From IMG/VR virus record IMGVR_UViG_3300028735_000003, positions 248,001-312,000 of that record: 64,000 nucleotides of DNA. One strand, given 5' to 3'. The notes under the pieces are model-generated. The model was not told the DNA's origin. It saw nothing but the letters and a program-made list of their open reading frames with translations, and made no database searches. The position numbers were made by a program, and so were the translations under genes. Shown one piece after another: positions 1 to 11,418 of the stretch. How positions within the stretch are numbered: position 1 is the stretch's first letter; every line of letters starts with the position of its first letter.

Positions 1-807
1 TCCTTTTCTATTAAAAAATAAACAATAATGTCCATTATATTTTTTATAATTACAAGAAATACCTAAATCATTAAATTTCTTTACAAATCTTATATGGCTA
101 TCTTCGTCGAACGAATAAGTGGAAATTCTACCAGAATAACCTGAAACACCAATATTATTTAAACTACAACTGTCCATAAACCATATTGCAATCCCCCTAG
201 CATCAATTTCATCTAATATCCACTGTGGGCAAGAAGTTTTTGTTTTAGGAAATTCTTGTTCTAAACCTATAATTTCTGTACAAAAATTAACAGCGGACTT
301 TTTTGCATAACCTTTATTTCTAACAATATTAGTTTTACAGTTAAATATATTAGCTTTCCATTGGCAATATTCTTTTTGATTAATGCTATGCGTAACCGAT
401 AATCTAATTTTAGATTTTCCTTCGGTCCTTATATGTCCATTACCTAAAAATGATCCTAATATTAGTTGCTTTTGATCAGAATTAATTGCTTTTACACTTA
501 AACCTTTATCTATAGAACCTTTTATTAAAGATCCTTTAGATAGTTTAGACGCTTCAACCCACCCATTTGATGTTAAAAATTTATGATTTTCTGTACATTT
601 TATCTTTCTTCCATTACAACTTATTTGTACTAATTTTTGCTTGCCTTTCTTAAAAATATTAGAAATTTCTTTATATTCAAATGTTTCTGATAACTCATTA
701 AAACTTAATACTAATGGCATATCATGATTTTTACAAAAATCATGATATAGTCTGCCAATTGATTTAGGTCCATTGTTTGTTACAACTCTTTGTTGATATG
801 GAAAGCA
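1..807 (-). other. Intein 2 in TerL, class 1, partial
   Basis: Starts CFPYQQRVVTNNG immediately after the Walker B DE. Block B KCTENHKF. Degenerate LAGLIDADG blocks LGSFLGNG and AIWFMDSCS. Confidence 0.88.
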
Positions 808-2454
808 CTCATCAAAAAAGATAACGTCAGCAGTATTATGTGTTGGAATACATTTTCTAGTTACCAAAAATAAATTACTTGGACTATCAACTGTAATACA
901 GCGCATTGGAACTGGATCAATAGGCTTTACATCAACTATAAATCTATGTGAACTATTTGTTGTATTTTTATTCTTTATATTTATTAATTTTCTTTTTAAT
1001 CTAAAAACTTGTAAATTAGTTGAGAATCTAATTCTATATTGGTCCTGATATCTTTTGTCATATCTGTAATTTTGCCCTTTATAAATATAAGCTTTAATTC
1101 CTAAACCTAATACAAGCTCATATACTTGATAAGCCAATCTCTTATTTATTTGTACGAATTCTATATTACCATTTTTATCACAATGACCGCTGCTATCTAA
1201 AAGCCCTTGCAATAAGGATAATCTCTGTACAAATGAACTTCTCATATAAATATCAGGTATATATTTGTCGTAAGTTACATTAAATTTCTTATAACTACTG
1301 ACTAATAAACCTAATTTGCGTAATTTTGCAGTAAGCCCTAAAATACGATAAGAATTTGATTTTGAAATACCAAAACTTCTATAATTGTTTATTGAAGATG
1401 GAATAATTCTATGTTTATAATTACTTAATACTTCAGGATCGACGGTATCTATTCGCCCTGAACCATCACCACTTCCTAACCACAATCCTAGCAAATACGG
1501 ATCTACAATTAATTCTTTTTCTGAAAATTGTAATGGTTTACAATTAGGTATAGAATGGTTTGTTTCACCAAAATAATTTAATGTTTGAAATATCTCTTTA
1601 GTATTTTTTATTTGAGGGTTAGGCGCATTTTGCCGTTTACCACATAAAAATTTATTAAGATTAATTCGATCTTTTTGGGTATATGTTTGCCATAAATGGT
1701 CTGCACAGGCATCTATTTCTGTTCCATCATCAAATATAATTCTATATGATTCTGGTTTCAAATCTATAGGATGTAATTTAATCACATGACATATATTACC
1801 ACTTTCATCAAATAATTCATCTCCCTCTTTAAGATTAATTAATTTAACAAAACCATTTGGAGTTGGAATCTCAGTATCTAATGATAACATACGACCCATT
1901 AATCTATCAGCATCAATGCCTGTAGACTCAATCCAAATATGATTACCACCAACGAATTGTTTAAAATGCAAAGAATCATTAGTAGGACTAGTGGGATCTA
2001 GTAGCGCCTGCATATATGATTTTATTTTACCGCCATTTTTTTTATCTGTTTTTTCTTTGTCTTCAAAAACGATAGATGAAGCTATCATTTGATTAAGTTT
2101 TGTTTTTGAATATGCGGCGGCTAATTCTAATAAAGGAAAAGCATGAATTACACGAATCGGAGGTTTATTTCCAACACCAAATAAACCAGACCCCATAAAA
2201 TACATTTCCAAGGCACCAGCCATGGTGGTACCACCAACCTGACGTCCTTTAACCATAATAACAGGCTTGGAGTTTGGCTCTAATGCCTTAATACCTATAT
2301 ACCTATATATATCTGCAAACGGTTTATACCCATTATTACTTAGTTTAAATGGCTTTCCATCCAAAGTAAGGTACTTCTCACAAAAATATACAGGGTCAAT
2401 TATAGATAACTGATCTTTGAGTTTTTTAAATAATTCATTACCTTCTTTATTCAT
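1..2454 (-). CDS. terL: Terminase large subunit, intein-containing (3' end runs off the window)
   Basis: Hand translation from ATG 2454 (MNKEGNELFKK...). Walker A-like VKGRQVGGTT. After removing inteins the extein reads RLMGR|TADVIFFDE (Walker B). Missing from the ORF track because it is truncated by the window edge. Confidence 0.9.
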   Translation of the reverse strand, partial: MNKEGNELFKKLKDQLSIIDPVYFCEKYLTLDGKPFKLSNNGYKPFADIYRYIGIKALEPNSKPVIMVKGRQVGGTTMAGALEMYFMGSGLFGVGNKPPIRVIHAFPLLELAAAYSKTKLNQMIASSIVFEDKEKTDKKNGGKIKSYMQALLDPTSPTNDSLHFKQFVGGNHIWIESTGIDADRLMGRMLSLDTEIPTPNGFVKLINLKEGDELFDESGNICHVIKLHPIDLKPESYRIIFDDGTEIDACADHLWQTYTQKDRINLNKFLCGKRQNAPNPQIKNTKEIFQTLNYFGETNHSIPNCKPLQFSEKELIVDPYLLGLWLGSGDGSGRIDTVDPEVLSNYKHRIIPSSINNYRSFGISKSNSYRILGLTAKLRKLGLLVSSYKKFNVTYDKYIPDIYMRSSFVQRLSLLQGLLDSSGHCDKNGNIEFVQINKRLAYQVYELVLGLGIKAYIYKGQNYRYDKRYQDQYRIRFSTNLQVFRLKRKLINIKNKNTTNSSHRFIVDVKPIDPVPMRCITVDSPSNLFLVTRKCIPTHNTADVIFFDECFPYQQRVVTNNGPKSIGRLYHDFCKNHDMPLVLSFNELSETFEYKEISNIFKKGKQKLVQISCNGRKIKCTENHKFLTSNGWVEASKLSKGSLIKGSIDKGLSVKAINSDQKQLILGSFLGNGHIRTEGKSKIRLSVTHSINQKEYCQWKANIFNCKTNIVRNKGYAKKSAVNFCTEIIGLEQEFPKTKTSCPQWILDEIDARGIAIWFMDSCSLNNIGVSGYSGRISTYSFDEDSHIRFVKKFNDLGISCNYKKYNGHYCLFFNRKG
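835..1890 (-). other. Intein 1 in TerL, class 3 (Met1, WCT triplet), with LAGLIDADG-type domain, 352 aa
   Basis: Starts MLSLDTEIPTPNG. Block B ACADHLW (Trp B12), block F PMRCITV (Cys F4), block G CIPTHN|T (Thr G5). Endonuclease blocks PYLLGLWLGSGDG and LQGLLDSSG. Confidence 0.88.
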
Positions 2455-6948: not shown

Positions 6949-8940
6949 TTATACGGCTAATGGTTTTACGGGCATTGGAGTAGGTGGGACTGGTTTATTT
7001 GCCAAATCTTCTTCCACCTCTATTTCTGGAGACTCTTTATTTAATGATTCCATCTCCATGTCTTTTCTAATTTGTTTTCTGGCTTTTTCTTTCTTATCTT
7101 CTTCTATTAATTTCTTTTTGGCTTGTTCTATTTCTAAAGAAGATGTGCTAGGAACATCTTCAATATCAATATCTCTAGTCTTCATTGTTCCTCTAAGTTT
7201 AGAGATAATATCTTCCAAACGAGTTGAAATGTAGTTATTAGCTTCAAGTGCCTTATTGGTAGCTTCTGATAATGCTGGAAAGAATGGAGCTAATCCCAAA
7301 CTATCTAGCATCATGTCTGCTAAAGCTAATTGTCTAGGCATTTCCCTTGTCTTATAGAACTTTGCAATATCTTCAAACTTTGCTACAACATCAGCTATAG
7401 TTAAATTAGAGAAAATTGATTCTATCATATGATCAAAATCTTTTGACGGGTCAGGCGGCGAAACTTTATCTTCTTTTATCTCTAGATTTTCATTTACTGA
7501 TTTAACTGGTTTCTCATCGAAAAGTGGGGGTGTGTTTGTAATTTGATGTGCATTCGGAAGTGAAGTGGTGTTTGGAGGTTGCTGCGCGTATGGCAACGCC
7601 TGTGCTGACACAGTAATCTCATCATCTATCACTAAGTCGTCATCAGCATCAGATACTTCTAAAGTATCGCCTTTACCCCCAGATTCTAACTTATTTAAGA
7701 ATTCATTTATTCCTTTAGATTCTGTATCATGTTCTTTTACATGCACTGGTGATGGTGCTGGAGTTGTGGTACCTGGAGTTGTTGCTGGCAATCCGCCAAC
7801 ATTACCGCTACCTTGCATTGGTGGTGCCGCTGAAGTTGGAGCAGGTATACTAGATGACGAGGGAGGTGGAAGGAAAGGTAGAGGGGAAGGGGAAGGGGAA
7901 GGCGAAGGGGAAGGGGATGGTAGAGGGGAAGGGGAAGGAGAAGGTGGAGTTGGAGGGGAAGGTGGAGTTGGAGGGGAAGGTGGAGTGGTAGGTGGAGAGA
8001 TAGGGGATGGTATAGATGAATGTTGCGGTGGAGATGAAGGGGACTCAGCATCAGATGGTATAGTACCCGAATTATTTGGCGCATCTTGAGCTATAGAATG
8101 TAATATTTCAGCAGCTTTTGCAAATCCCCTGTAGCTAAGTCTATTAGCCTCTCTAACAATCATATCATTGTATAACTTATCAGATGAGCTTATCTTATTA
8201 ACCATCTGAATTTTTTTCTTTAATTCATATATAGTATCTAATAATGATGCAAACTCTTTATCAGCAAATAACTGTCCTTCTTGGGATCTAAGAAGTTTTT
8301 CGGCTGAATCCAATCTCCCTATAATCTTATTACGTTGTTTTTCTATTATTTTTTTCTTTTCAGAAGTTGATAGTTCGTCAGTAACAGAATCTCTAGCAAA
8401 ATCAATACTGTTACCATCAACATTTTGATTCGTTTTTTCTTTTATTGGATCAGGCTTAATCGGAAGCAAATATCCAACATCAGCATCACCATACCAATTA
8501 TGTGCAACTTTGTATTTCAAGTGAGTACCCTCTTCATAAAATCGTAACCAGTTAAGAAAATCATATACTTCAGTTATAAACCAACCCTTAGTTGCAAAAC
8601 GAACTGCGGCATTTCTACTAAGTTGATTTTTCTTCTCCTCATAATATATGGTTTTAACGGCTTGTAGCCATTTCTGCATATCATGAGCGCCAGGTATATT
8701 TTGCATTTGTTCGAAATTAGGATATGCTGTTTTTGTCTTTACTTTTTTAAATAATTCTGGGTTTACGTCTCTAAGATCTTCAATATCTACTCCTAATTTC
8801 TCAAGAATCCTCAATTGTCTCAATAATCTTTCCATTTCTGAGGGATCTGACGTATATAAATGACTATCTGGATATATAATAATTAGATCACTCCATCTTG
8901 GGCAATCTTTTATATTAATTTCCGTTGAAGATTTTGTCAT
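6949..8940 (-). CDS. Hypothetical protein with Pro/Ser-rich low-complexity linker
   Basis: Start revised to 8940 (4 nt after the upstream stop at 8945). PS/PPT repeats centrally, coiled-coil C-terminus. Confidence 0.75.
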   Translation of the reverse strand: MTKSSTEINIKDCPRWSDLIIIYPDSHLYTSDPSEMERLLRQLRILEKLGVDIEDLRDVNPELFKKVKTKTAYPNFEQMQNIPGAHDMQKWLQAVKTIYYEEKKNQLSRNAAVRFATKGWFITEVYDFLNWLRFYEEGTHLKYKVAHNWYGDADVGYLLPIKPDPIKEKTNQNVDGNSIDFARDSVTDELSTSEKKKIIEKQRNKIIGRLDSAEKLLRSQEGQLFADKEFASLLDTIYELKKKIQMVNKISSSDKLYNDMIVREANRLSYRGFAKAAEILHSIAQDAPNNSGTIPSDAESPSSPPQHSSIPSPISPPTTPPSPPTPPSPPTPPSPSPSPLPSPSPSPSPSPSPLPFLPPPSSSSIPAPTSAAPPMQGSGNVGGLPATTPGTTTPAPSPVHVKEHDTESKGINEFLNKLESGGKGDTLEVSDADDDLVIDDEITVSAQALPYAQQPPNTTSLPNAHQITNTPPLFDEKPVKSVNENLEIKEDKVSPPDPSKDFDHMIESIFSNLTIADVVAKFEDIAKFYKTREMPRQLALADMMLDSLGLAPFFPALSEATNKALEANNYISTRLEDIISKLRGTMKTRDIDIEDVPSTSSLEIEQAKKKLIEEDKKEKARKQIRKDMEMESLNKESPEIEVEEDLANKPVPPTPMPVKPLAV
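7861..7998. repeat. Purine-rich GGGGAA hexamer runs plus 18-bp tandem repeat (GAAGGTGGAGTTGGAGGG x2.6 at 7940-7986)
   Basis: Read directly; encodes (PS)n and (PPSPPT)n on the minus strand. Confidence 0.9.
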
Positions 8941-8944
8941 GAAA

Positions 8945-9700
8945 TTACTCGTTAATTTTCTTGTTAATTGTTTCACTTAAAAGTTTAGCTTCAGCCAATC
9001 TCACTTCTGTATTAGGTGCATCTTTCTCACTTGGAAGCTTTAACTTTGAAAATTCTTCATTAAACACTTCCATAAAATACAAAGATGTTTCTAAGTCCAT
9101 TTGAGATAGAACTTTTCTTATTACATCATGAAATACAGAAATATGCTGATCTACAACCTGTAATGTGACTTTGTGTTCTACTGTTTGATTTACCGGGACT
9201 TCTGTAAACTTGTAATACTTCTCCAATATATTTCCAAGAACTTCGGCATAATCAATTAACAATCTATCTACTCTTGTATTGATGTTTCTAGGATCTTCTT
9301 GTATTTCATCGAAAACCTGAGCCAATCTGCTCTCGATAGCAACACATAAGTTAGTAACAATTTGCCTTATATCCAGTTCCTTGCCAGCCAACTCGAGCAT
9401 TTTATTCTTGTAAGTTGGATTATTTTGAATAGATAAAGATAGTTGCTCCTCAGTATTTGTAGCTAACGCTGATTTAGATTTAGCCAAATCAGCATTAATC
9501 ATATTATAAATGTCTAAATAATTAGATTGAAAAGACTTAATAGATTTTTCCGCAATTACAAACTTCATTTCGCTTACATTGGTATATTTAGCTTTCAACC
9601 AATCATGTATATCTTTAGCAGAGATACCAATAATTAGTTTAGAGATAATCTCGTCCTTATCTGGATGCTCCAAAATCTTCTTGAGTGCATTTTTGTTCAT
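8945..9700 (-). CDS. Hypothetical helical protein
   Basis: Start revised to MNKNALKK (GGAAGAG upstream). Helical N-terminus and coiled-coil middle. Confidence 0.7.
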   Translation of the reverse strand: MNKNALKKILEHPDKDEIISKLIIGISAKDIHDWLKAKYTNVSEMKFVIAEKSIKSFQSNYLDIYNMINADLAKSKSALATNTEEQLSLSIQNNPTYKNKMLELAGKELDIRQIVTNLCVAIESRLAQVFDEIQEDPRNINTRVDRLLIDYAEVLGNILEKYYKFTEVPVNQTVEHKVTLQVVDQHISVFHDVIRKVLSQMDLETSLYFMEVFNEEFSKLKLPSEKDAPNTEVRLAEAKLLSETINKKINE

Positions 9701-9757
9701 TACACGCTGCTCTTCCAATCATATTATTACCAAAATACCTTCTATATTGTGTTGAAA

Positions 9758-10465
9758 TTATTGTCTTAATCTATCTTCTCTAGAATCAAAAATATTATAG
9801 AATGGGGCATCAAATGCTTTAGTTTGATTAGATACATCACCGCCAGGAACCTTTGTTCCATTATTTAGAGTGAACCCAGTTTCAAAATTATAAATCTTTT
9901 TATCTAACTCACACTGCCACATATGTTCACCTACACGAGCCATTTGCGCCCCGGGATGGTCTGGACAATATCTAGAACTTAATGGTGCCTCTAATATATC
10001 CATTTGTTTTGTCATATTACTATTTTCTATTAACTTTTCAGAATCAGCGATTTTGTTTACTTCAGATAAGTCCTTTCTTGGTTGCTCATATTTTTTTTTA
10101 ACTTCTTCCAGCCTTTTGTCTAAAAGATCTTGCCTCTGAGCAACAGCATCAGGAGGAGATGCGATTGTTAATAGAAGTTCATCTATTACAGAGGCTTGTT
10201 TTTGTAAAGCTGGATCACCAGATTCATCAAGAGCCGTAGCAAGATTTGCTAATTCTTCTACTGATTCAGGAGTTATCTTAGATTCTTCAGGTGGTTCTAT
10301 ATCTTCAACCGCTTCCGCAGTTATTTTTAACAAAGCCGCTGCTTGAACACAAGAGTTTGCAACAATTTGCAAACATTCTTCGTCATATTCTGCAAGTAGT
10401 ATTGCTTCATTATCTGGACTTTCAAGCCAAGATGCTATTGCTGTTAACATTTCTGATATTCTCAT
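9758..10465 (-). CDS. Hypothetical protein with C-terminal Cys/His cluster
   Basis: CPDHPG...WQC motif; GGAG RBS. Confidence 0.7.
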   Translation of the reverse strand: MRISEMLTAIASWLESPDNEAILLAEYDEECLQIVANSCVQAAALLKITAEAVEDIEPPEESKITPESVEELANLATALDESGDPALQKQASVIDELLLTIASPPDAVAQRQDLLDKRLEEVKKKYEQPRKDLSEVNKIADSEKLIENSNMTKQMDILEAPLSSRYCPDHPGAQMARVGEHMWQCELDKKIYNFETGFTLNNGTKVPGGDVSNQTKAFDAPFYNIFDSREDRLRQ

Positions 10466-10527
10466 ATTACTCCACCTTCATTGCATTCGCCTTCACCGCC
10501 TAAGAACCTCTCTCATTTTTATAGTCT

Positions 10528-11418
10528 TTATATTTTAAATTCTTTTACACCAGCATTACGTAATTCCTCTTTGAATTCGTAGACATCTTTGGCAAATCCG
10601 CTATCAAATTTGGGCTTAGTTCTGCTATTATTCCATGCCCTAATTATATCTACCAAACGATTTCTCAAATTTATTGCAGTTTCTTTCAATTCTTCATTAG
10701 GTAAGGTATTTGGAGCATTATAAATATAATACCACAATGGATCCTCAACAGAATCTATTCCATAATAATCACCCATTGCTAACAAAAATGCCTTTATAAG
10801 ATGTCGATCAAGAATTTTCATATCAATATCACCGACCTCAGTAATTCCTGGTTCGTTATATTGCGCAACTAATTCTGAATCCACACCGCGAGCTTCCCAA
10901 ATAGACTTTATCTTCTCAAGCCTAGGAGCAAAAGATTTTGCAAAATTATATACACCCTGTATTATTTTGTCTCTATATTCTTTACCTGGAACATTTATAT
11001 TATGAGTATCTTTTATTTTCTCATATATAGCATAATCATTCGTAATGTTATTCAGATGTACCAATAGAGTACATATTCTATCATAAAACTCGTTTTTATC
11101 CATTGGATTATCTGGTGTTTCTTCCTCTAATTTAGTTCCGAATTCAGAGGCTGCGTTTAAAAAACTCATAGCAAGACCTTTGCGCTGTTTGCCTCCTGGT
11201 GTAACATTGCTCTGTTCAATTCTATATAATTCTCTTATAGCGTTGAATCTGGATAGAACGCCAGTTGTTTTTGAGGAATGACCTAAAATAGCTCTTAGAA
11301 CGCCAAGCATTTCGCCTTTGTGTTCTTTCAACATTTCGTCATCTGATTTAGCAGCAAATGACAAAATCTTATACTTGTAATTATAGATATCTGCTAATCT
11401 AAACAATCGTTGAGTCAT
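10528..11418 (-). CDS. Hypothetical protein
   Basis: 296 aa ORF, tightly packed. Confidence 0.65.
   Translation of the reverse strand: MTQRLFRLADIYNYKYKILSFAAKSDDEMLKEHKGEMLGVLRAILGHSSKTTGVLSRFNAIRELYRIEQSNVTPGGKQRKGLAMSFLNAASEFGTKLEEETPDNPMDKNEFYDRICTLLVHLNNITNDYAIYEKIKDTHNINVPGKEYRDKIIQGVYNFAKSFAPRLEKIKSIWEARGVDSELVAQYNEPGITEVGDIDMKILDRHLIKAFLLAMGDYYGIDSVEDPLWYYIYNAPNTLPNEELKETAINLRNRLVDIIRAWNNSRTKPKFDSGFAKDVYEFKEELRNAGVKEFKI

What the first reader, a model, noticed from the sequence alone, without database searches (positions are those of the whole stretch)
1..1890. Two inteins bracket the 9-residue Walker B of the terminase; the first is a Met1 class 3 intein
Seen: GR|MLSLDT...IPTHN|TADVIFFDE|CFPY. 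Only 27 nt of extein separate the two inteins. Intein 1 has no N-terminal nucleophile (Met) but has the WCT triplet (ADHLW, MRCITV, PTHN). Known: WCT defines class 3 inteins, which splice through a Cys branched intermediate, and they occur in phage terminases. Inference: packaging ATPase activity needs two mechanistically different splicing events, which could act as a conditional checkpoint.
Basis: partly seen in the sequence, partly recalled or inferred. Interest (0 to 1): 0.72.

Follow-up and report, generated by a model that had tools for sequence, protein, structure and literature searches.

The report
Two inteins flank terminase Walker B
The DNA-packaging enzyme gene of a 354-kb phage from a microbial mat carries two self-splicing protein inserts of different, already known mechanistic types, nine residues apart; this pattern is common among related phages and nothing in the sequence suggests they act as a regulatory switch.

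Summary
On the minus strand, a 1,333-aa GpA-type large terminase (TerL) runs off the window's left edge. It carries two ~350-aa inserts at exactly GR|M…THN|T and DE|C…HN|C. They are separated only by TADVIFFDE, the Walker B strand. Removing both gives 627 aa, which aligns without gaps to hundreds of intein-free homologues.

Intein 1 meets every sequence criterion of a class 3 intein. It has non-nucleophilic Met1, Trp B12, Cys F4, Thr G5 and Thr+1. Its best solved relatives are the class 3 inteins 6RIX and 6BS8. Intein 2 is a canonical class 1 intein.

None of this is unusual:
- Eighty-two related TerLs carry the same-site class 3 intein, with Gln1 (61), Met1 (19) or Leu1 (2).
- Twenty-seven of 120 intein-bearing relatives carry both inteins.
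- All four occupancy states occur among the closest relatives.
- Met1 is 12 of 108 in the wider family.

Published precedents exist for two inteins in one TerL (cyanophage Mic1) and for class 3 plus class 1 in one protein (M. smegmatis DnaB). The "checkpoint" idea is unsupported and untested.

New here: all four LAGLIDADG catalytic Asp are substituted, so the endonucleases look dead. The genome also holds at least four more inteins. Verdict: a new member of a known kind, of modest interest.

The parts
1891..2454 (-). TerL N-extein (residues 1-188). It includes the deviant GpA-type Walker A, KGRQVGGTT, at window 2224-2250.
   Evidence: ORF and translation. It aligns gap-free with intein-free homologues. 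In the model of homologue P0001 this region is strand 64-67, loop, helix 74-87, which is P-loop geometry.
835..1890 (-). Intein 1, 352 aa: a class 3 (WCT) intein with a LAGLIDADG_3 endonuclease domain, inserted at GR|T. Key positions: Met1 codon ATG at 1888-1890; His B10...Trp B12 at 1690-1698; Cys F4 (C519, TGT) at 898-900; Thr G5-His-Asn at 835-843.
   Evidence: Clean insertion relative to homologues. W67, C331, T350 and H65 are invariant in 82 same-site inteins. The best PDB matches by sequence are the class 3 inteins 6RIX/6RIY/6BS8, with C331 aligned to Cys124. The model has pLDDT 91.5. It matches PI-SceI overall, and its HINT part matches 6BS8 (TM 0.87 by target) and 6RIY (0.83).
1468..1494 (-). 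Intein 1 LAGLIDADG motif 1 (LLGLWLGSG). The catalytic Asp is replaced by Ser (S328, AGT).
   Evidence: Asp in 66 of 76 aligned relatives, Ser here.
1186..1215 (-). Intein 1 LAGLIDADG motif 2 (LLQGLLDSSG). The catalytic Asp is replaced by Ser (S422, AGC).
   Evidence: Asp in 66 of 75 aligned relatives; this is the only Ser.
808..834 (-). The 9-residue inter-intein extein TADVIFFDE (residues 541-549): the Walker B strand plus the catalytic Asp-Glu. T541 is the +1 nucleophile of intein 1 and E549 is the -1 residue of intein 2.
   Evidence: It is contiguous with both flanks in intein-free homologues (GR-TADVIFFDE-[CVA]Q). In the P0001 model it is a beta-strand (192-195) ending in D196-E197. That model matches solved large terminases.
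1..807 (-). Intein 2, first 269 of 354 aa: a class 1 intein with a LAGLIDADG_2 endonuclease domain, inserted at DE|C. Key positions: Cys1 codon TGC at 805-807; block B TENH at 583-594. The remaining 85 aa, block F (VYDLEV..NHNF), the C-terminal VHN and Cys+1 (C904) lie outside the window, at L001:7743-8000(-).
   Evidence: Pfam Intein_splicing and LAGLIDADG_2. Cys1, T-x-x-H, Asp F4 and Cys+1 are invariant in all 65 same-site inteins, with [HS]-Asn at the C-terminus (His 61, Ser 4). The best PDB matches are the class 1 inteins Spl DnaX, Npu DnaB and Ssp DnaB.
436..465 (-). Intein 2 LAGLIDADG motif 1 (LILGSFLGNG). The catalytic Asp is replaced by Asn (N672, AAT).
   Evidence: Asp in 47 of 48 relatives.
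163..192 (-). Intein 2 LAGLIDADG motif 2 (IAIWFMDSCS). Asp-Gly is replaced by Ser-Cys (S762 AGT, C763 TGT).
   Evidence: Asp-Gly in 45 of 48 relatives. Runs X2 and X4 carry Gly at 763 (A>C at L001 8168).

Best explanation
The gene encodes the large terminase (GpA-type TerL) of a ~354-kb phage assembled from a microbial-mat metagenome. Two unrelated selfish inteins interrupt it, and both target the ATPase catalytic centre.

Intein 1 (352 aa) sits between GR and the Thr that opens the Walker B strand. It most likely splices by the class 3 route:
1. The block F Cys (C519, intein position 331) attacks the R188-M189 peptide bond and forms a branched thioester.
2. The N-extein passes to the side chain of Thr541 (+1).
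3. Asn540 cyclises, and an O-N shift restores the peptide bond.

Met1 is a bystander residue.

Intein 2 (354 aa) follows the Walker B Asp-Glu directly and most likely splices by the canonical class 1 route (Cys550 N-S shift, attack by Cys904, cyclisation of Asn903).

Both events are needed to rebuild the continuous ...GR-TADVIFFDE-CQRT... motif of the 627-aa mature enzyme. They most likely happen constitutively and independently after translation.

Both embedded LAGLIDADG endonucleases have lost their catalytic Asp residues in this genome. The inteins are therefore probably no longer mobile here and persist only because imprecise loss would destroy an essential gene.

Shown: boundaries, motifs, homology, distribution. 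Inferred: the chemistry, constitutive splicing and endonuclease inactivity.
For: - Boundaries: clean gaps against intein-free homologues, and a spliced length of 627 aa that equals theirs.
- TerL identity: Pfam GpA_ATPase; PHROG 675, terminase large subunit, E=1e-51 for the 89%-identical homologue; annotated Bacillus phage TerLs by tblastn; fold matches to T4 gp17, HK97, D6E, Sf6 and P74-26 terminases.
- Class 3 signature: Met1/WCT/Thr+1 present and invariant across 82 same-site inteins. The sequence aligns to the solved class 3 inteins 6RIX/6RIY/6BS8, placing C331 on the catalytic Cys124. The confident model superposes on them. The definition and mechanism come from PMC2807308.
- Intein 2 is class 1.
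- Selfish, independent elements: site B and site C occupancy change at least 31 and 37 times on a 128-tip extein tree. None, B-only, C-only and both all occur among the eight nearest relatives, which have >=85% extein identity.
- Paralogous inteins sit in other ATPase motifs of the same genome.
- Endonuclease decay.
- Real DNA.
Against: - No experiment shows that either intein splices.
- The genome is a metagenome assembly, so phage viability is assumed. Support for that comes from depth ~65 and recurrence in a second, independent sample.
- The set used for occupancy counts was length-selected, so frequencies are not population estimates.
- Three cysteines (intein positions 34, 62 = block B7, and 331 = F4) are invariant in the site-B family. 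This leaves room for redox sensitivity, so 'constitutive' is an assumption.
- The loss of endonuclease activity is inferred only from the catalytic-residue rule for LAGLIDADG enzymes.
Confidence: 0.82

Rival explanations
1. Conditional checkpoint. One or both inteins splice only under permissive conditions such as reducing state or temperature, so DNA packaging is gated after translation. The two mechanisms provide two different sensors.
For: - The class 3 intein MsmDnaBi1 is reversibly inhibited by oxidation through its catalytic Cys, while the class 1 intein in the same DnaB is not (PMC6195587).
- Both inteins here use Cys nucleophiles.
- The site-B family has extra invariant cysteines at positions 34 and 62 (block B7), near the active site.
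- Both inteins sit in the ATPase centre, so an unspliced protein should be inactive.
Against: - Occupancy is sporadic and the two inteins are gained and lost independently. Close relatives do well with none, either or both.
- The DnaBi1 disulfide partner Cys48 is Ser48 here (alignment).
- Location in conserved catalytic motifs is explained equally well by homing-site conservation.
- Similar inteins sit in four other genes of this genome, which looks like a general intein load rather than a dedicated packaging switch.
- No data bear on splicing kinetics.
Confidence: 0.1
2. Intein 1 is a decaying, non-splicing remnant, so this terL allele is dead. Alternatively, it splices by a class 2-like direct attack of Thr+1 on the N-terminal junction rather than through Cys F4.
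For: - Met1 cannot start a class 1 reaction.
- The endonuclease domains are visibly degenerating.
- The genome is a metagenome assembly. Class 3-like pseudo-inteins exist, for example Arth_1007 (PMC3196547, title and abstract only).
Against: - Every splicing residue (H65, W67, C331, T350, H351, N352, T+1) is intact here and invariant in 82 relatives whose other positions have diverged to 55-70% identity. That indicates purifying selection on splicing.
- The ORF is intact over 1,333 codons.
- The same allele recurs in a second metagenome.
- Known class 2 inteins lack WCT and use Cys+1 (PMC2807308).
Confidence: 0.05
3. Assembly or annotation artefact: a chimeric contig joins intein-bearing variants, or the 'inteins' are really free-standing endonuclease genes or introns.
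For: The source is a metagenome. Related huge phages often have genes split by group I introns and free-standing endonucleases (PMC12880540).
Against: - There is a single uninterrupted reading frame through both inserts.
- One 41.5-kb contig at uniform depth has no differences, and independent contigs from another study bridge the junctions.
- More than 25 relatives share the same architecture.
- No ORF of 40 aa or more lies on the opposite strand at window 1-2266.
Confidence: 0.01

Closest known systems
Class 3 inteins: prototype mycobacteriophage Bethlehem DnaB intein (Tori et al. 2010, PMC2807308); solved MchDnaB1 (6RIX/6RIY) and MsmDnaBi1 (6BS8)
   Same: - Non-nucleophilic residue 1; Trp B12, Cys F4 and Thr G5; Thr+1; His B10; C-terminal His-Asn.
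- His65 and Trp67 sit at the same intein positions as in the prototype.
- Embedded LAGLIDADG endonuclease, as in 82.5% of 1,701 class 3 inteins (PMC7891396).
- Host is a phage ATPase, and terminases are named as class 3 hosts in PMC2807308.
   Different: - Residue 1 is Met (Pro in MP-Be DnaB, Ala in the DnaB1 inteins).
- Block B7 is Cys (Ser or Asp in those).
- The insertion is before Walker B of a GpA-type TerL rather than in a P-loop.
- The endonuclease catalytic Asp residues are lost.
- Splicing is untested.
Mycobacteriophage and actinobacteriophage TerL inteins (Kelley et al. 2016, PMC5050341; Gosselin et al. 2025 preprint)
   Same: Class 1 and class 3 inteins are concentrated in the TerL ATPase domain at the P-loop and Walker B. 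Representative ones were shown to splice and to have active endonucleases.
   Different: - Those are in terminase_1 and terminase_6 families; this one is GpA-type (PF05876).
- Those papers describe one intein per TerL at any of seven sites. They do not describe two flanking the same motif.
Cyanophage Mic1 TerL with two different inteins (PMC7156551)
   Same: One TerL carries two different inteins, one of them with a homing endonuclease. The authors offered the same speculation, that they are biosensors controlling packaging.
   Different: The Mic1 inteins lie in different domains (ATPase and nuclease). Here both lie in the ATPase centre, 9 residues apart.
M. smegmatis DnaB with DnaBi1 (class 3) plus DnaBi2 (class 1) (PMC6195587)
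   Same: One essential ATPase holds a class 3 and a class 1 intein. It is the precedent for different behaviour of the two.
   Different: - DnaBi1 is a mini-intein in the P-loop, with an experimentally shown Cys48-Cys118 redox switch.
- Here Cys48 is Ser.
- Both inteins here are full-length, and they are much closer together.
[quoted passage not shown]
   Same: Several insertion sites lie close together in one ATPase. Single and double occupancy coexist among relatives.
   Different: - That study tested homing interference experimentally; homing was not tested here.
- Here the endonucleases look inactive.

Membership tests
Class 3 intein (intein 1) | HINT splicing domain with blocks A, B, F and G at the two ends of the insert | tested here: met
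   Sequence alignment to 6RIX/6RIY/6BS8 over blocks A-B and F-G. Model pLDDT 91.5. The HINT part superposes on 6BS8 (TM 0.87) and 6RIY (0.83).
Class 3 intein (intein 1) | Residue 1 is not Cys, Ser or Thr | tested here: met
   Met189, codon ATG. The boundary is fixed by intein-free homologues. Same-site relatives have Gln 61, Met 19 and Leu 2.
Class 3 intein (intein 1) | WCT triplet: Trp at B12, Cys at F4, Thr at G5 | tested here: met
   W67, C331 and T350 are invariant in all 82 same-site inteins. C331 aligns with the WCT Cys124 of MchDnaB1.
Class 3 intein (intein 1) | [quoted passage not shown] | tested here: met
   Thr541. Relatives have Thr 78 and Ser 4.
Class 3 intein (intein 1) | Splicing depends on the block F Cys and passes through a block F branched thioester | not testable with these tools
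   This needs expression, C519 mutants and detection of the intermediate.
Class 1 intein (intein 2) | Cys/Ser1, block B T-x-x-H, block F Asp, C-terminal His-Asn, Cys/Ser/Thr +1 | tested here: met
   C550, T-E-N-H, VYDLEV, VHN|C904. The best solved relatives are class 1 inteins. Pfam Intein_splicing scores 66.7 bits.
Active LAGLIDADG homing endonuclease (both inteins) | Two LAGLIDADG motifs, each ending in a catalytic acidic residue (rule from established knowledge of PI-SceI and I-CreI-type enzymes) | tested here: not met
   The domains and motifs are present. All four acidic positions are substituted: Ser and Ser in intein 1, Asn and Ser in intein 2. Relatives keep Asp.
Large terminase, GpA type | GpA_ATPase family match, Walker A and B, terminase fold, packaging-gene context | tested here: met
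   PF05876. PHROG 675. The top 42 fold matches are terminases. P-loop and Walker B geometry appear in the model. The portal gene is adjacent.
Redox-gated conditional intein of the MsmDnaBi1 type | Non-catalytic Cys48 that forms a disulfide with the catalytic block F Cys | tested here: not met
   In the gap-free alignment 2-70 to 6BS8, position 48 is Ser here. Other invariant cysteines (positions 34 and 62) exist, but their role is unknown.

The most novel reading that the evidence does not exclude
The site-B class 3 intein family could be a redox- or order-sensitive gate on DNA packaging. Its invariant extra cysteines sit at intein positions 34 and 62 (block B7), next to the catalytic Cys F4. 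In the tandem arrangement the whole Walker B strand is a 9-residue linker between two ~40-kDa domains. That could force a fixed splicing order, or let one intein's state control the other's.
Probability: 0.08. Interest if true: 0.6.

Novelty: new member of a known kind. Interest (0 to 1): 0.3.

Why it matters
The practical value is mainly for annotation. Huge-phage TerL genes of this GpA-type clade often carry one to two inteins at three sites in the ATPase centre. That inflates the ORF to 950-1,350 aa and can confuse gene calling and TerL phylogenies.

The locus also offers natural material for intein biochemistry:
- a compact class 3 / class 1 pair separated by nine residues;
- a large family of Gln1, Met1 and Leu1 class 3 inteins with a Cys at block B7;
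- matched relatives with active-looking and dead-looking endonucleases.

These could be used to study the order of splicing, interference between neighbouring inteins, and what happens to an intein after its endonuclease dies. It does not by itself reveal a new mechanism or a regulatory system.

Tried and rejected
- Plus-strand reading of 1-2400: no ORF in any of the three frames. The gene is on the minus strand.
- Nucleotide search against deposited phages: no match.
- Protein-level matches to deposited phages: only about 26% identity, to Bacillus phage TerLs.
- Fixed regex anchors for junctions missed many relatives. I replaced them with an alignment to intein-free references.
- The negative association between site B and site C in the independent-pairs test is rejected as a sampling artefact. 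The 120 sequences were chosen by length, so each must hold at least one intein.
- Sequence search of the intein-free homologue against the PDB found nothing. I used a fold search of a model instead.
- Promoter- and terminator-like sites around the gene are no more frequent than in shuffles.
- DNA identity between the insertion sites of the paralogous inteins is modest. TerL site C against PhoH Walker B is 25 of 42 nt; TerL site B against the AAA P-loop is 18 of 42 nt. Ectopic homing between them is therefore plausible at the protein-motif level (DE|CQ) but not demonstrated.
- No contig skipped exactly one intein. Contigs drop rare variants, so this says little about polymorphism.
- Model coordinates are not exposed, so I could not measure the distance from Cys F4 to the scissile bond.
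- The supplementary tables listing residue 1 of published class 3 inteins are not held, and Tori & Perler 2011 is not in the library. I could not establish whether Met1 has been explicitly reported.
Full report
**What is there.** The three plus-strand frames of window 1-2400 are closed. On the minus strand a single frame opens at window 2454 (MNKEGNELF...) and runs off the left edge of the window.

The window is G000:C1:248001-312000 of a single 353,765-bp contig with 33.4% G+C. In the genome the ORF is 246453-250454(-) and encodes 1,333 aa. Pfam finds GpA_ATPase, Intein_splicing, LAGLIDADG_2 and LAGLIDADG_3 in it.

**Boundaries.** A search with the C-terminal 430 residues found about 1,000 relatives. 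The best are 620-635 aa long and 72-89% identical, and they come from contigs of up to 491 kb. Aligning eight of them to the full protein gives two clean gaps, R188|M189...N540|T541 and E549|C550...N903|C904.

Removing both inserts leaves 188+9+430 = 627 aa, the length of the nearest homologue. The nine residues between the inserts, TADVIFFDE, are contiguous with GR on one side and [C/V/A]Q[R/K]T on the other in every intein-free homologue.

Intein 2 is only partly in the window, and its C-terminal junction lies 255 nt beyond position 1.

**Host protein and motif.** The intein-free homologue P0001 has 89% extein identity. It matches PHROG 675, terminase large subunit, over its full length.

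Its AlphaFold model (pLDDT 71.8) has strand 64-67, the loop KGRQVGG and helix 74-87, which is a P-loop. A strand at 192-195 ends in D196-E197, which is Walker B and corresponds to TADVIFFDE. All 42 fold matches at E<=0.001 are large terminases: T4 gp17, HK97, D6E, Sf6, P74-26 and others. The portal gene is the next gene downstream. The Walker B label is therefore sound.

**Intein 1 is a class 3 intein by every sequence criterion.** The class is defined by a non-nucleophilic residue 1 that co-varies with Trp B12, Cys F4 and Thr G5, plus Ser or Thr at +1 (PMC2807308). Here the residues are:
- Met1, codon ATG
- H65-L-W67
- C331 in MRCITV
- T350-H-N, then Thr+1

By sequence, the best solved relatives are exactly the class 3 inteins MchDnaB1 (6RIX, 6RIY) and MsmDnaBi1 (6BS8). 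In those alignments H65 and W67 are in register, C331 lies on the WCT Cys124, and PTHN lies on PTHN (Cys124 is identified).

A model built with 56 relatives is confident (pLDDT 91.5, pTM 0.89). Overall it resembles the bifunctional intein-endonuclease PI-SceI. In its HINT part it resembles 6BS8 (TM 0.87 by target) and 6RIY (0.83). The chemistry itself, Cys F4 as obligate nucleophile, is inferred from family membership and cannot be tested here.

**Intein 2 is canonical class 1.** It has Cys1, T-E-N-H, VYDLEV...NHNF and VHN|Cys+1. Cys1, the T-x-x-H, Asp F4 and Cys+1 are invariant in 65 same-site relatives, and the C-terminus is HN in 61 and SN in 4. Its nearest solved relatives are the Spl DnaX, Npu DnaB and Ssp DnaB inteins.

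**Neither Met1 nor the tandem arrangement is unusual.** A search restricted to proteins of 733-2,333 aa returned 435 TerL relatives that must contain inserts. In the best 120, insertions fall at three sites:
- inside Walker A (GRQVGG|T): P0151, and probably P0172
- site B (GR|T): 82 proteins
- site C (DE|C): 65 proteins
- both B and C: 27 proteins, with full-length or mini versions

All 82 site-B inteins lack an N-terminal nucleophile (Gln 61, Met 19, Leu 2). All end in THN and are followed by Thr (78) or Ser (4). H65, W67, C331 and T350 are invariant.

An exhaustive search with intein 1 found 17,207 representative proteins. In 108 full-length segments taken from the best 150, residue 1 is Ala 64, Met 12, Pro 12, Gly 5, Gln 4, Leu 4, Arg 3, Cys 2, His 1 and Asp 1. 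WCT is near-invariant, and most insertions lie in P-loops (GK|...|T/S). Met1 is thus one of several interchangeable bystander residues. Within TerL it marks the subclade closest to this phage.

**Selfish elements or switch?** On an extein-only tree of 128 sequences, site-B occupancy changes at least 31 times and site-C occupancy at least 37 times. Among the eight relatives with at least 85% extein identity, three have no intein, one has only B, one has only C and three have both.

The inteins are more diverged than the exteins. Intein 1 is 61-69% identical and intein 2 is 49-84%, against 79-89% for the exteins of the same proteins. This is the pattern of independently gained and lost mobile elements.

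The negative B/C association is an artefact of the length filter, so I disregard it.

- Cyanophage Mic1 TerL has two different inteins and drew the same biosensor speculation (PMC7156551).
- M. smegmatis DnaB carries a class 3 and a class 1 intein, with experimentally shown redox gating of the class 3 one through Cys48-Cys118 (PMC6195587).

Here the Cys48 position is Ser. The site-B family does have invariant cysteines at positions 34 and 62 (block B7). In the wider family B7 is Asp in 72 and Cys in 19 of 108. The checkpoint idea is therefore neither supported nor excluded.

**Endonuclease decay (new observation).** The acidic residue that closes each LAGLIDADG motif is kept by relatives but substituted in this genome at all four positions:

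| Intein | Position | Here | Relatives |
|---|---|---|---|
| 1 | 140 | Ser | Asp in 66 of 76 |
| 1 | 234 | Ser | Asp in 66 of 75 |
| 2 | 123 | Asn | Asp in 47 of 48 |
| 2 | 213-214 | Ser-Cys | Asp-Gly in 45 of 48 |

 The nearest dual-intein relative, P0122, keeps all four. The splicing residues are untouched.

By the established catalytic rule for LAGLIDADG enzymes (my knowledge, not tested here), both endonucleases should be inactive. That fits the late stage of the homing cycle. The inteins are also more A+T-rich (27.8% and 25.5% G+C) than the exteins (34%).

**Reality of the DNA.** The likely source run (X1, microbial mat) holds the gene in one 41.5-kb contig at depth ~65 with no differences. 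A hot-spring metagenome from another study (X2) has near-identical contigs. One bridges intein 2-start, Walker B and intein 1-end (L001 8750-9303). Another bridges the intein 1 N-junction (9700-10547). X3 bridges the intein 2 C-junction (7661-7811).

No difference is listed at the Met1 codon, although 41 differences were not shown. No contig skips exactly one intein.

**Wider context.** The same genome holds at least four more inteins:
- A second Met1/WCT intein, 47.5% identical to intein 1, sits in the P-loop of an AAA ATPase.
- An Ala1/WCT intein sits in the P-loop of a UvsW-like helicase.
- A paralogue of intein 2, 49% identical, sits at the Walker B (ILLDE|C...HN|CQN) of a PIN-PhoH ATPase.
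- A class 1-like intein sits in the adjacent portal gene.

Each of the three paralogues of the TerL inteins has also lost at least one LAGLIDADG Asp.

**Verdict.** Met1 and the tandem layout are common in this clade. The regulatory inference is unsupported and not original. This is a new member of known kinds: a class 3 and a class 1 intein in a phage TerL. The closeness of the pair, the size of the Gln/Met/Leu1 family and the dead endonucleases give it modest interest.

Noticed in passing
window 163-192, 436-465, 1186-1215, 1468-1494 (minus strand): All four LAGLIDADG catalytic Asp positions of the two TerL inteins are substituted in this genome (Ser, Ser, Asn, Ser-Cys). Relatives, including the closest dual-intein one (P0122), keep Asp. 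The splicing residues are intact. Both homing endonucleases are probably inactive.
   Followed up: yes
outside the window: G000:C1:320512-321543(-), locus L002: A second Met1/WCT class 3 intein, 47.5% identical to TerL intein 1, sits in the P-loop of an AAA-type ATPase (GVGK|MLDLETELPT...RCITVD...PTHN|T). Its first LAGLIDADG Asp is replaced by Lys.
   Followed up: partly
outside the window: G000:C1:148997-150049(-), locus L003: An Ala1/WCT class 3 intein sits in the P-loop (GSGK|AQPLD...QCILID...LTHN|T) of a UvsW-like helicase (ResIII, Helicase_C, UvsW_N). Its second LAGLIDADG Asp is replaced by Asn.
   Followed up: partly
outside the window: G000:C1:136742-137815(-), locus L004: A class 1 intein, 49% identical to TerL intein 2, sits at the Walker B of a PIN-PhoH ATPase (ILLDE|CFPYEQ...IAHN|CQN). 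The local DE|CQ site motif is the same as in TerL. This suggests past ectopic homing between Walker B sites, but DNA identity of the sites is only 25 of 42 nt. It shares the MDSG variant of motif 2.
   Followed up: partly
L001:3324-6377(-), the gene immediately downstream of terL (outside the window): The 1,018-aa portal protein also appears to carry an intein (...NVFE|CYDEETEVLT...TPNH...LAGLIDADG-like domain...ITIQGN|SAQ) with Gly instead of His before the terminal Asn. The two adjacent packaging genes therefore hold three inteins. I did not check the boundaries against intein-free portals.
   Followed up: partly
relatives P0151 and P0172: This TerL family has a third insertion site inside Walker A (GRQVG[GK]|T). 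In P0151 it is occupied by a class 3-like mini-intein starting with Asp (DLDINT...PTHN|T), together with a site-B intein. P0172 seems to start inside such an intein.
   Followed up: no
window 1705-1707 (Cys250 = intein position 62, block B7) and 1789-1791 (Cys222 = position 34): Two cysteines besides the catalytic Cys F4 are invariant in all aligned site-B inteins. Block B7 is Asp in most other class 3 inteins (72 of 108) and Cys in 19 of 108. Their role is unknown. They are candidate redox partners.
   Followed up: partly
L001 8168 and 9874 (window 168 and 1874): Near-identical variants appear in other metagenomes. Runs X2 and X4 read Gly instead of Cys763 in intein 2 endonuclease motif 2. 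Run X2 reads Ile instead of Thr194 (block A position 6 of intein 1), a state also seen in 2 of 82 relatives.
   Followed up: no
L001:2710-3246(-): A 179-aa ORF two genes downstream of terL matches transposase PHROGs (phrog_506 and phrog_12300, E about 1e-17). This is another mobile-element trace inside the packaging module.
   Followed up: no
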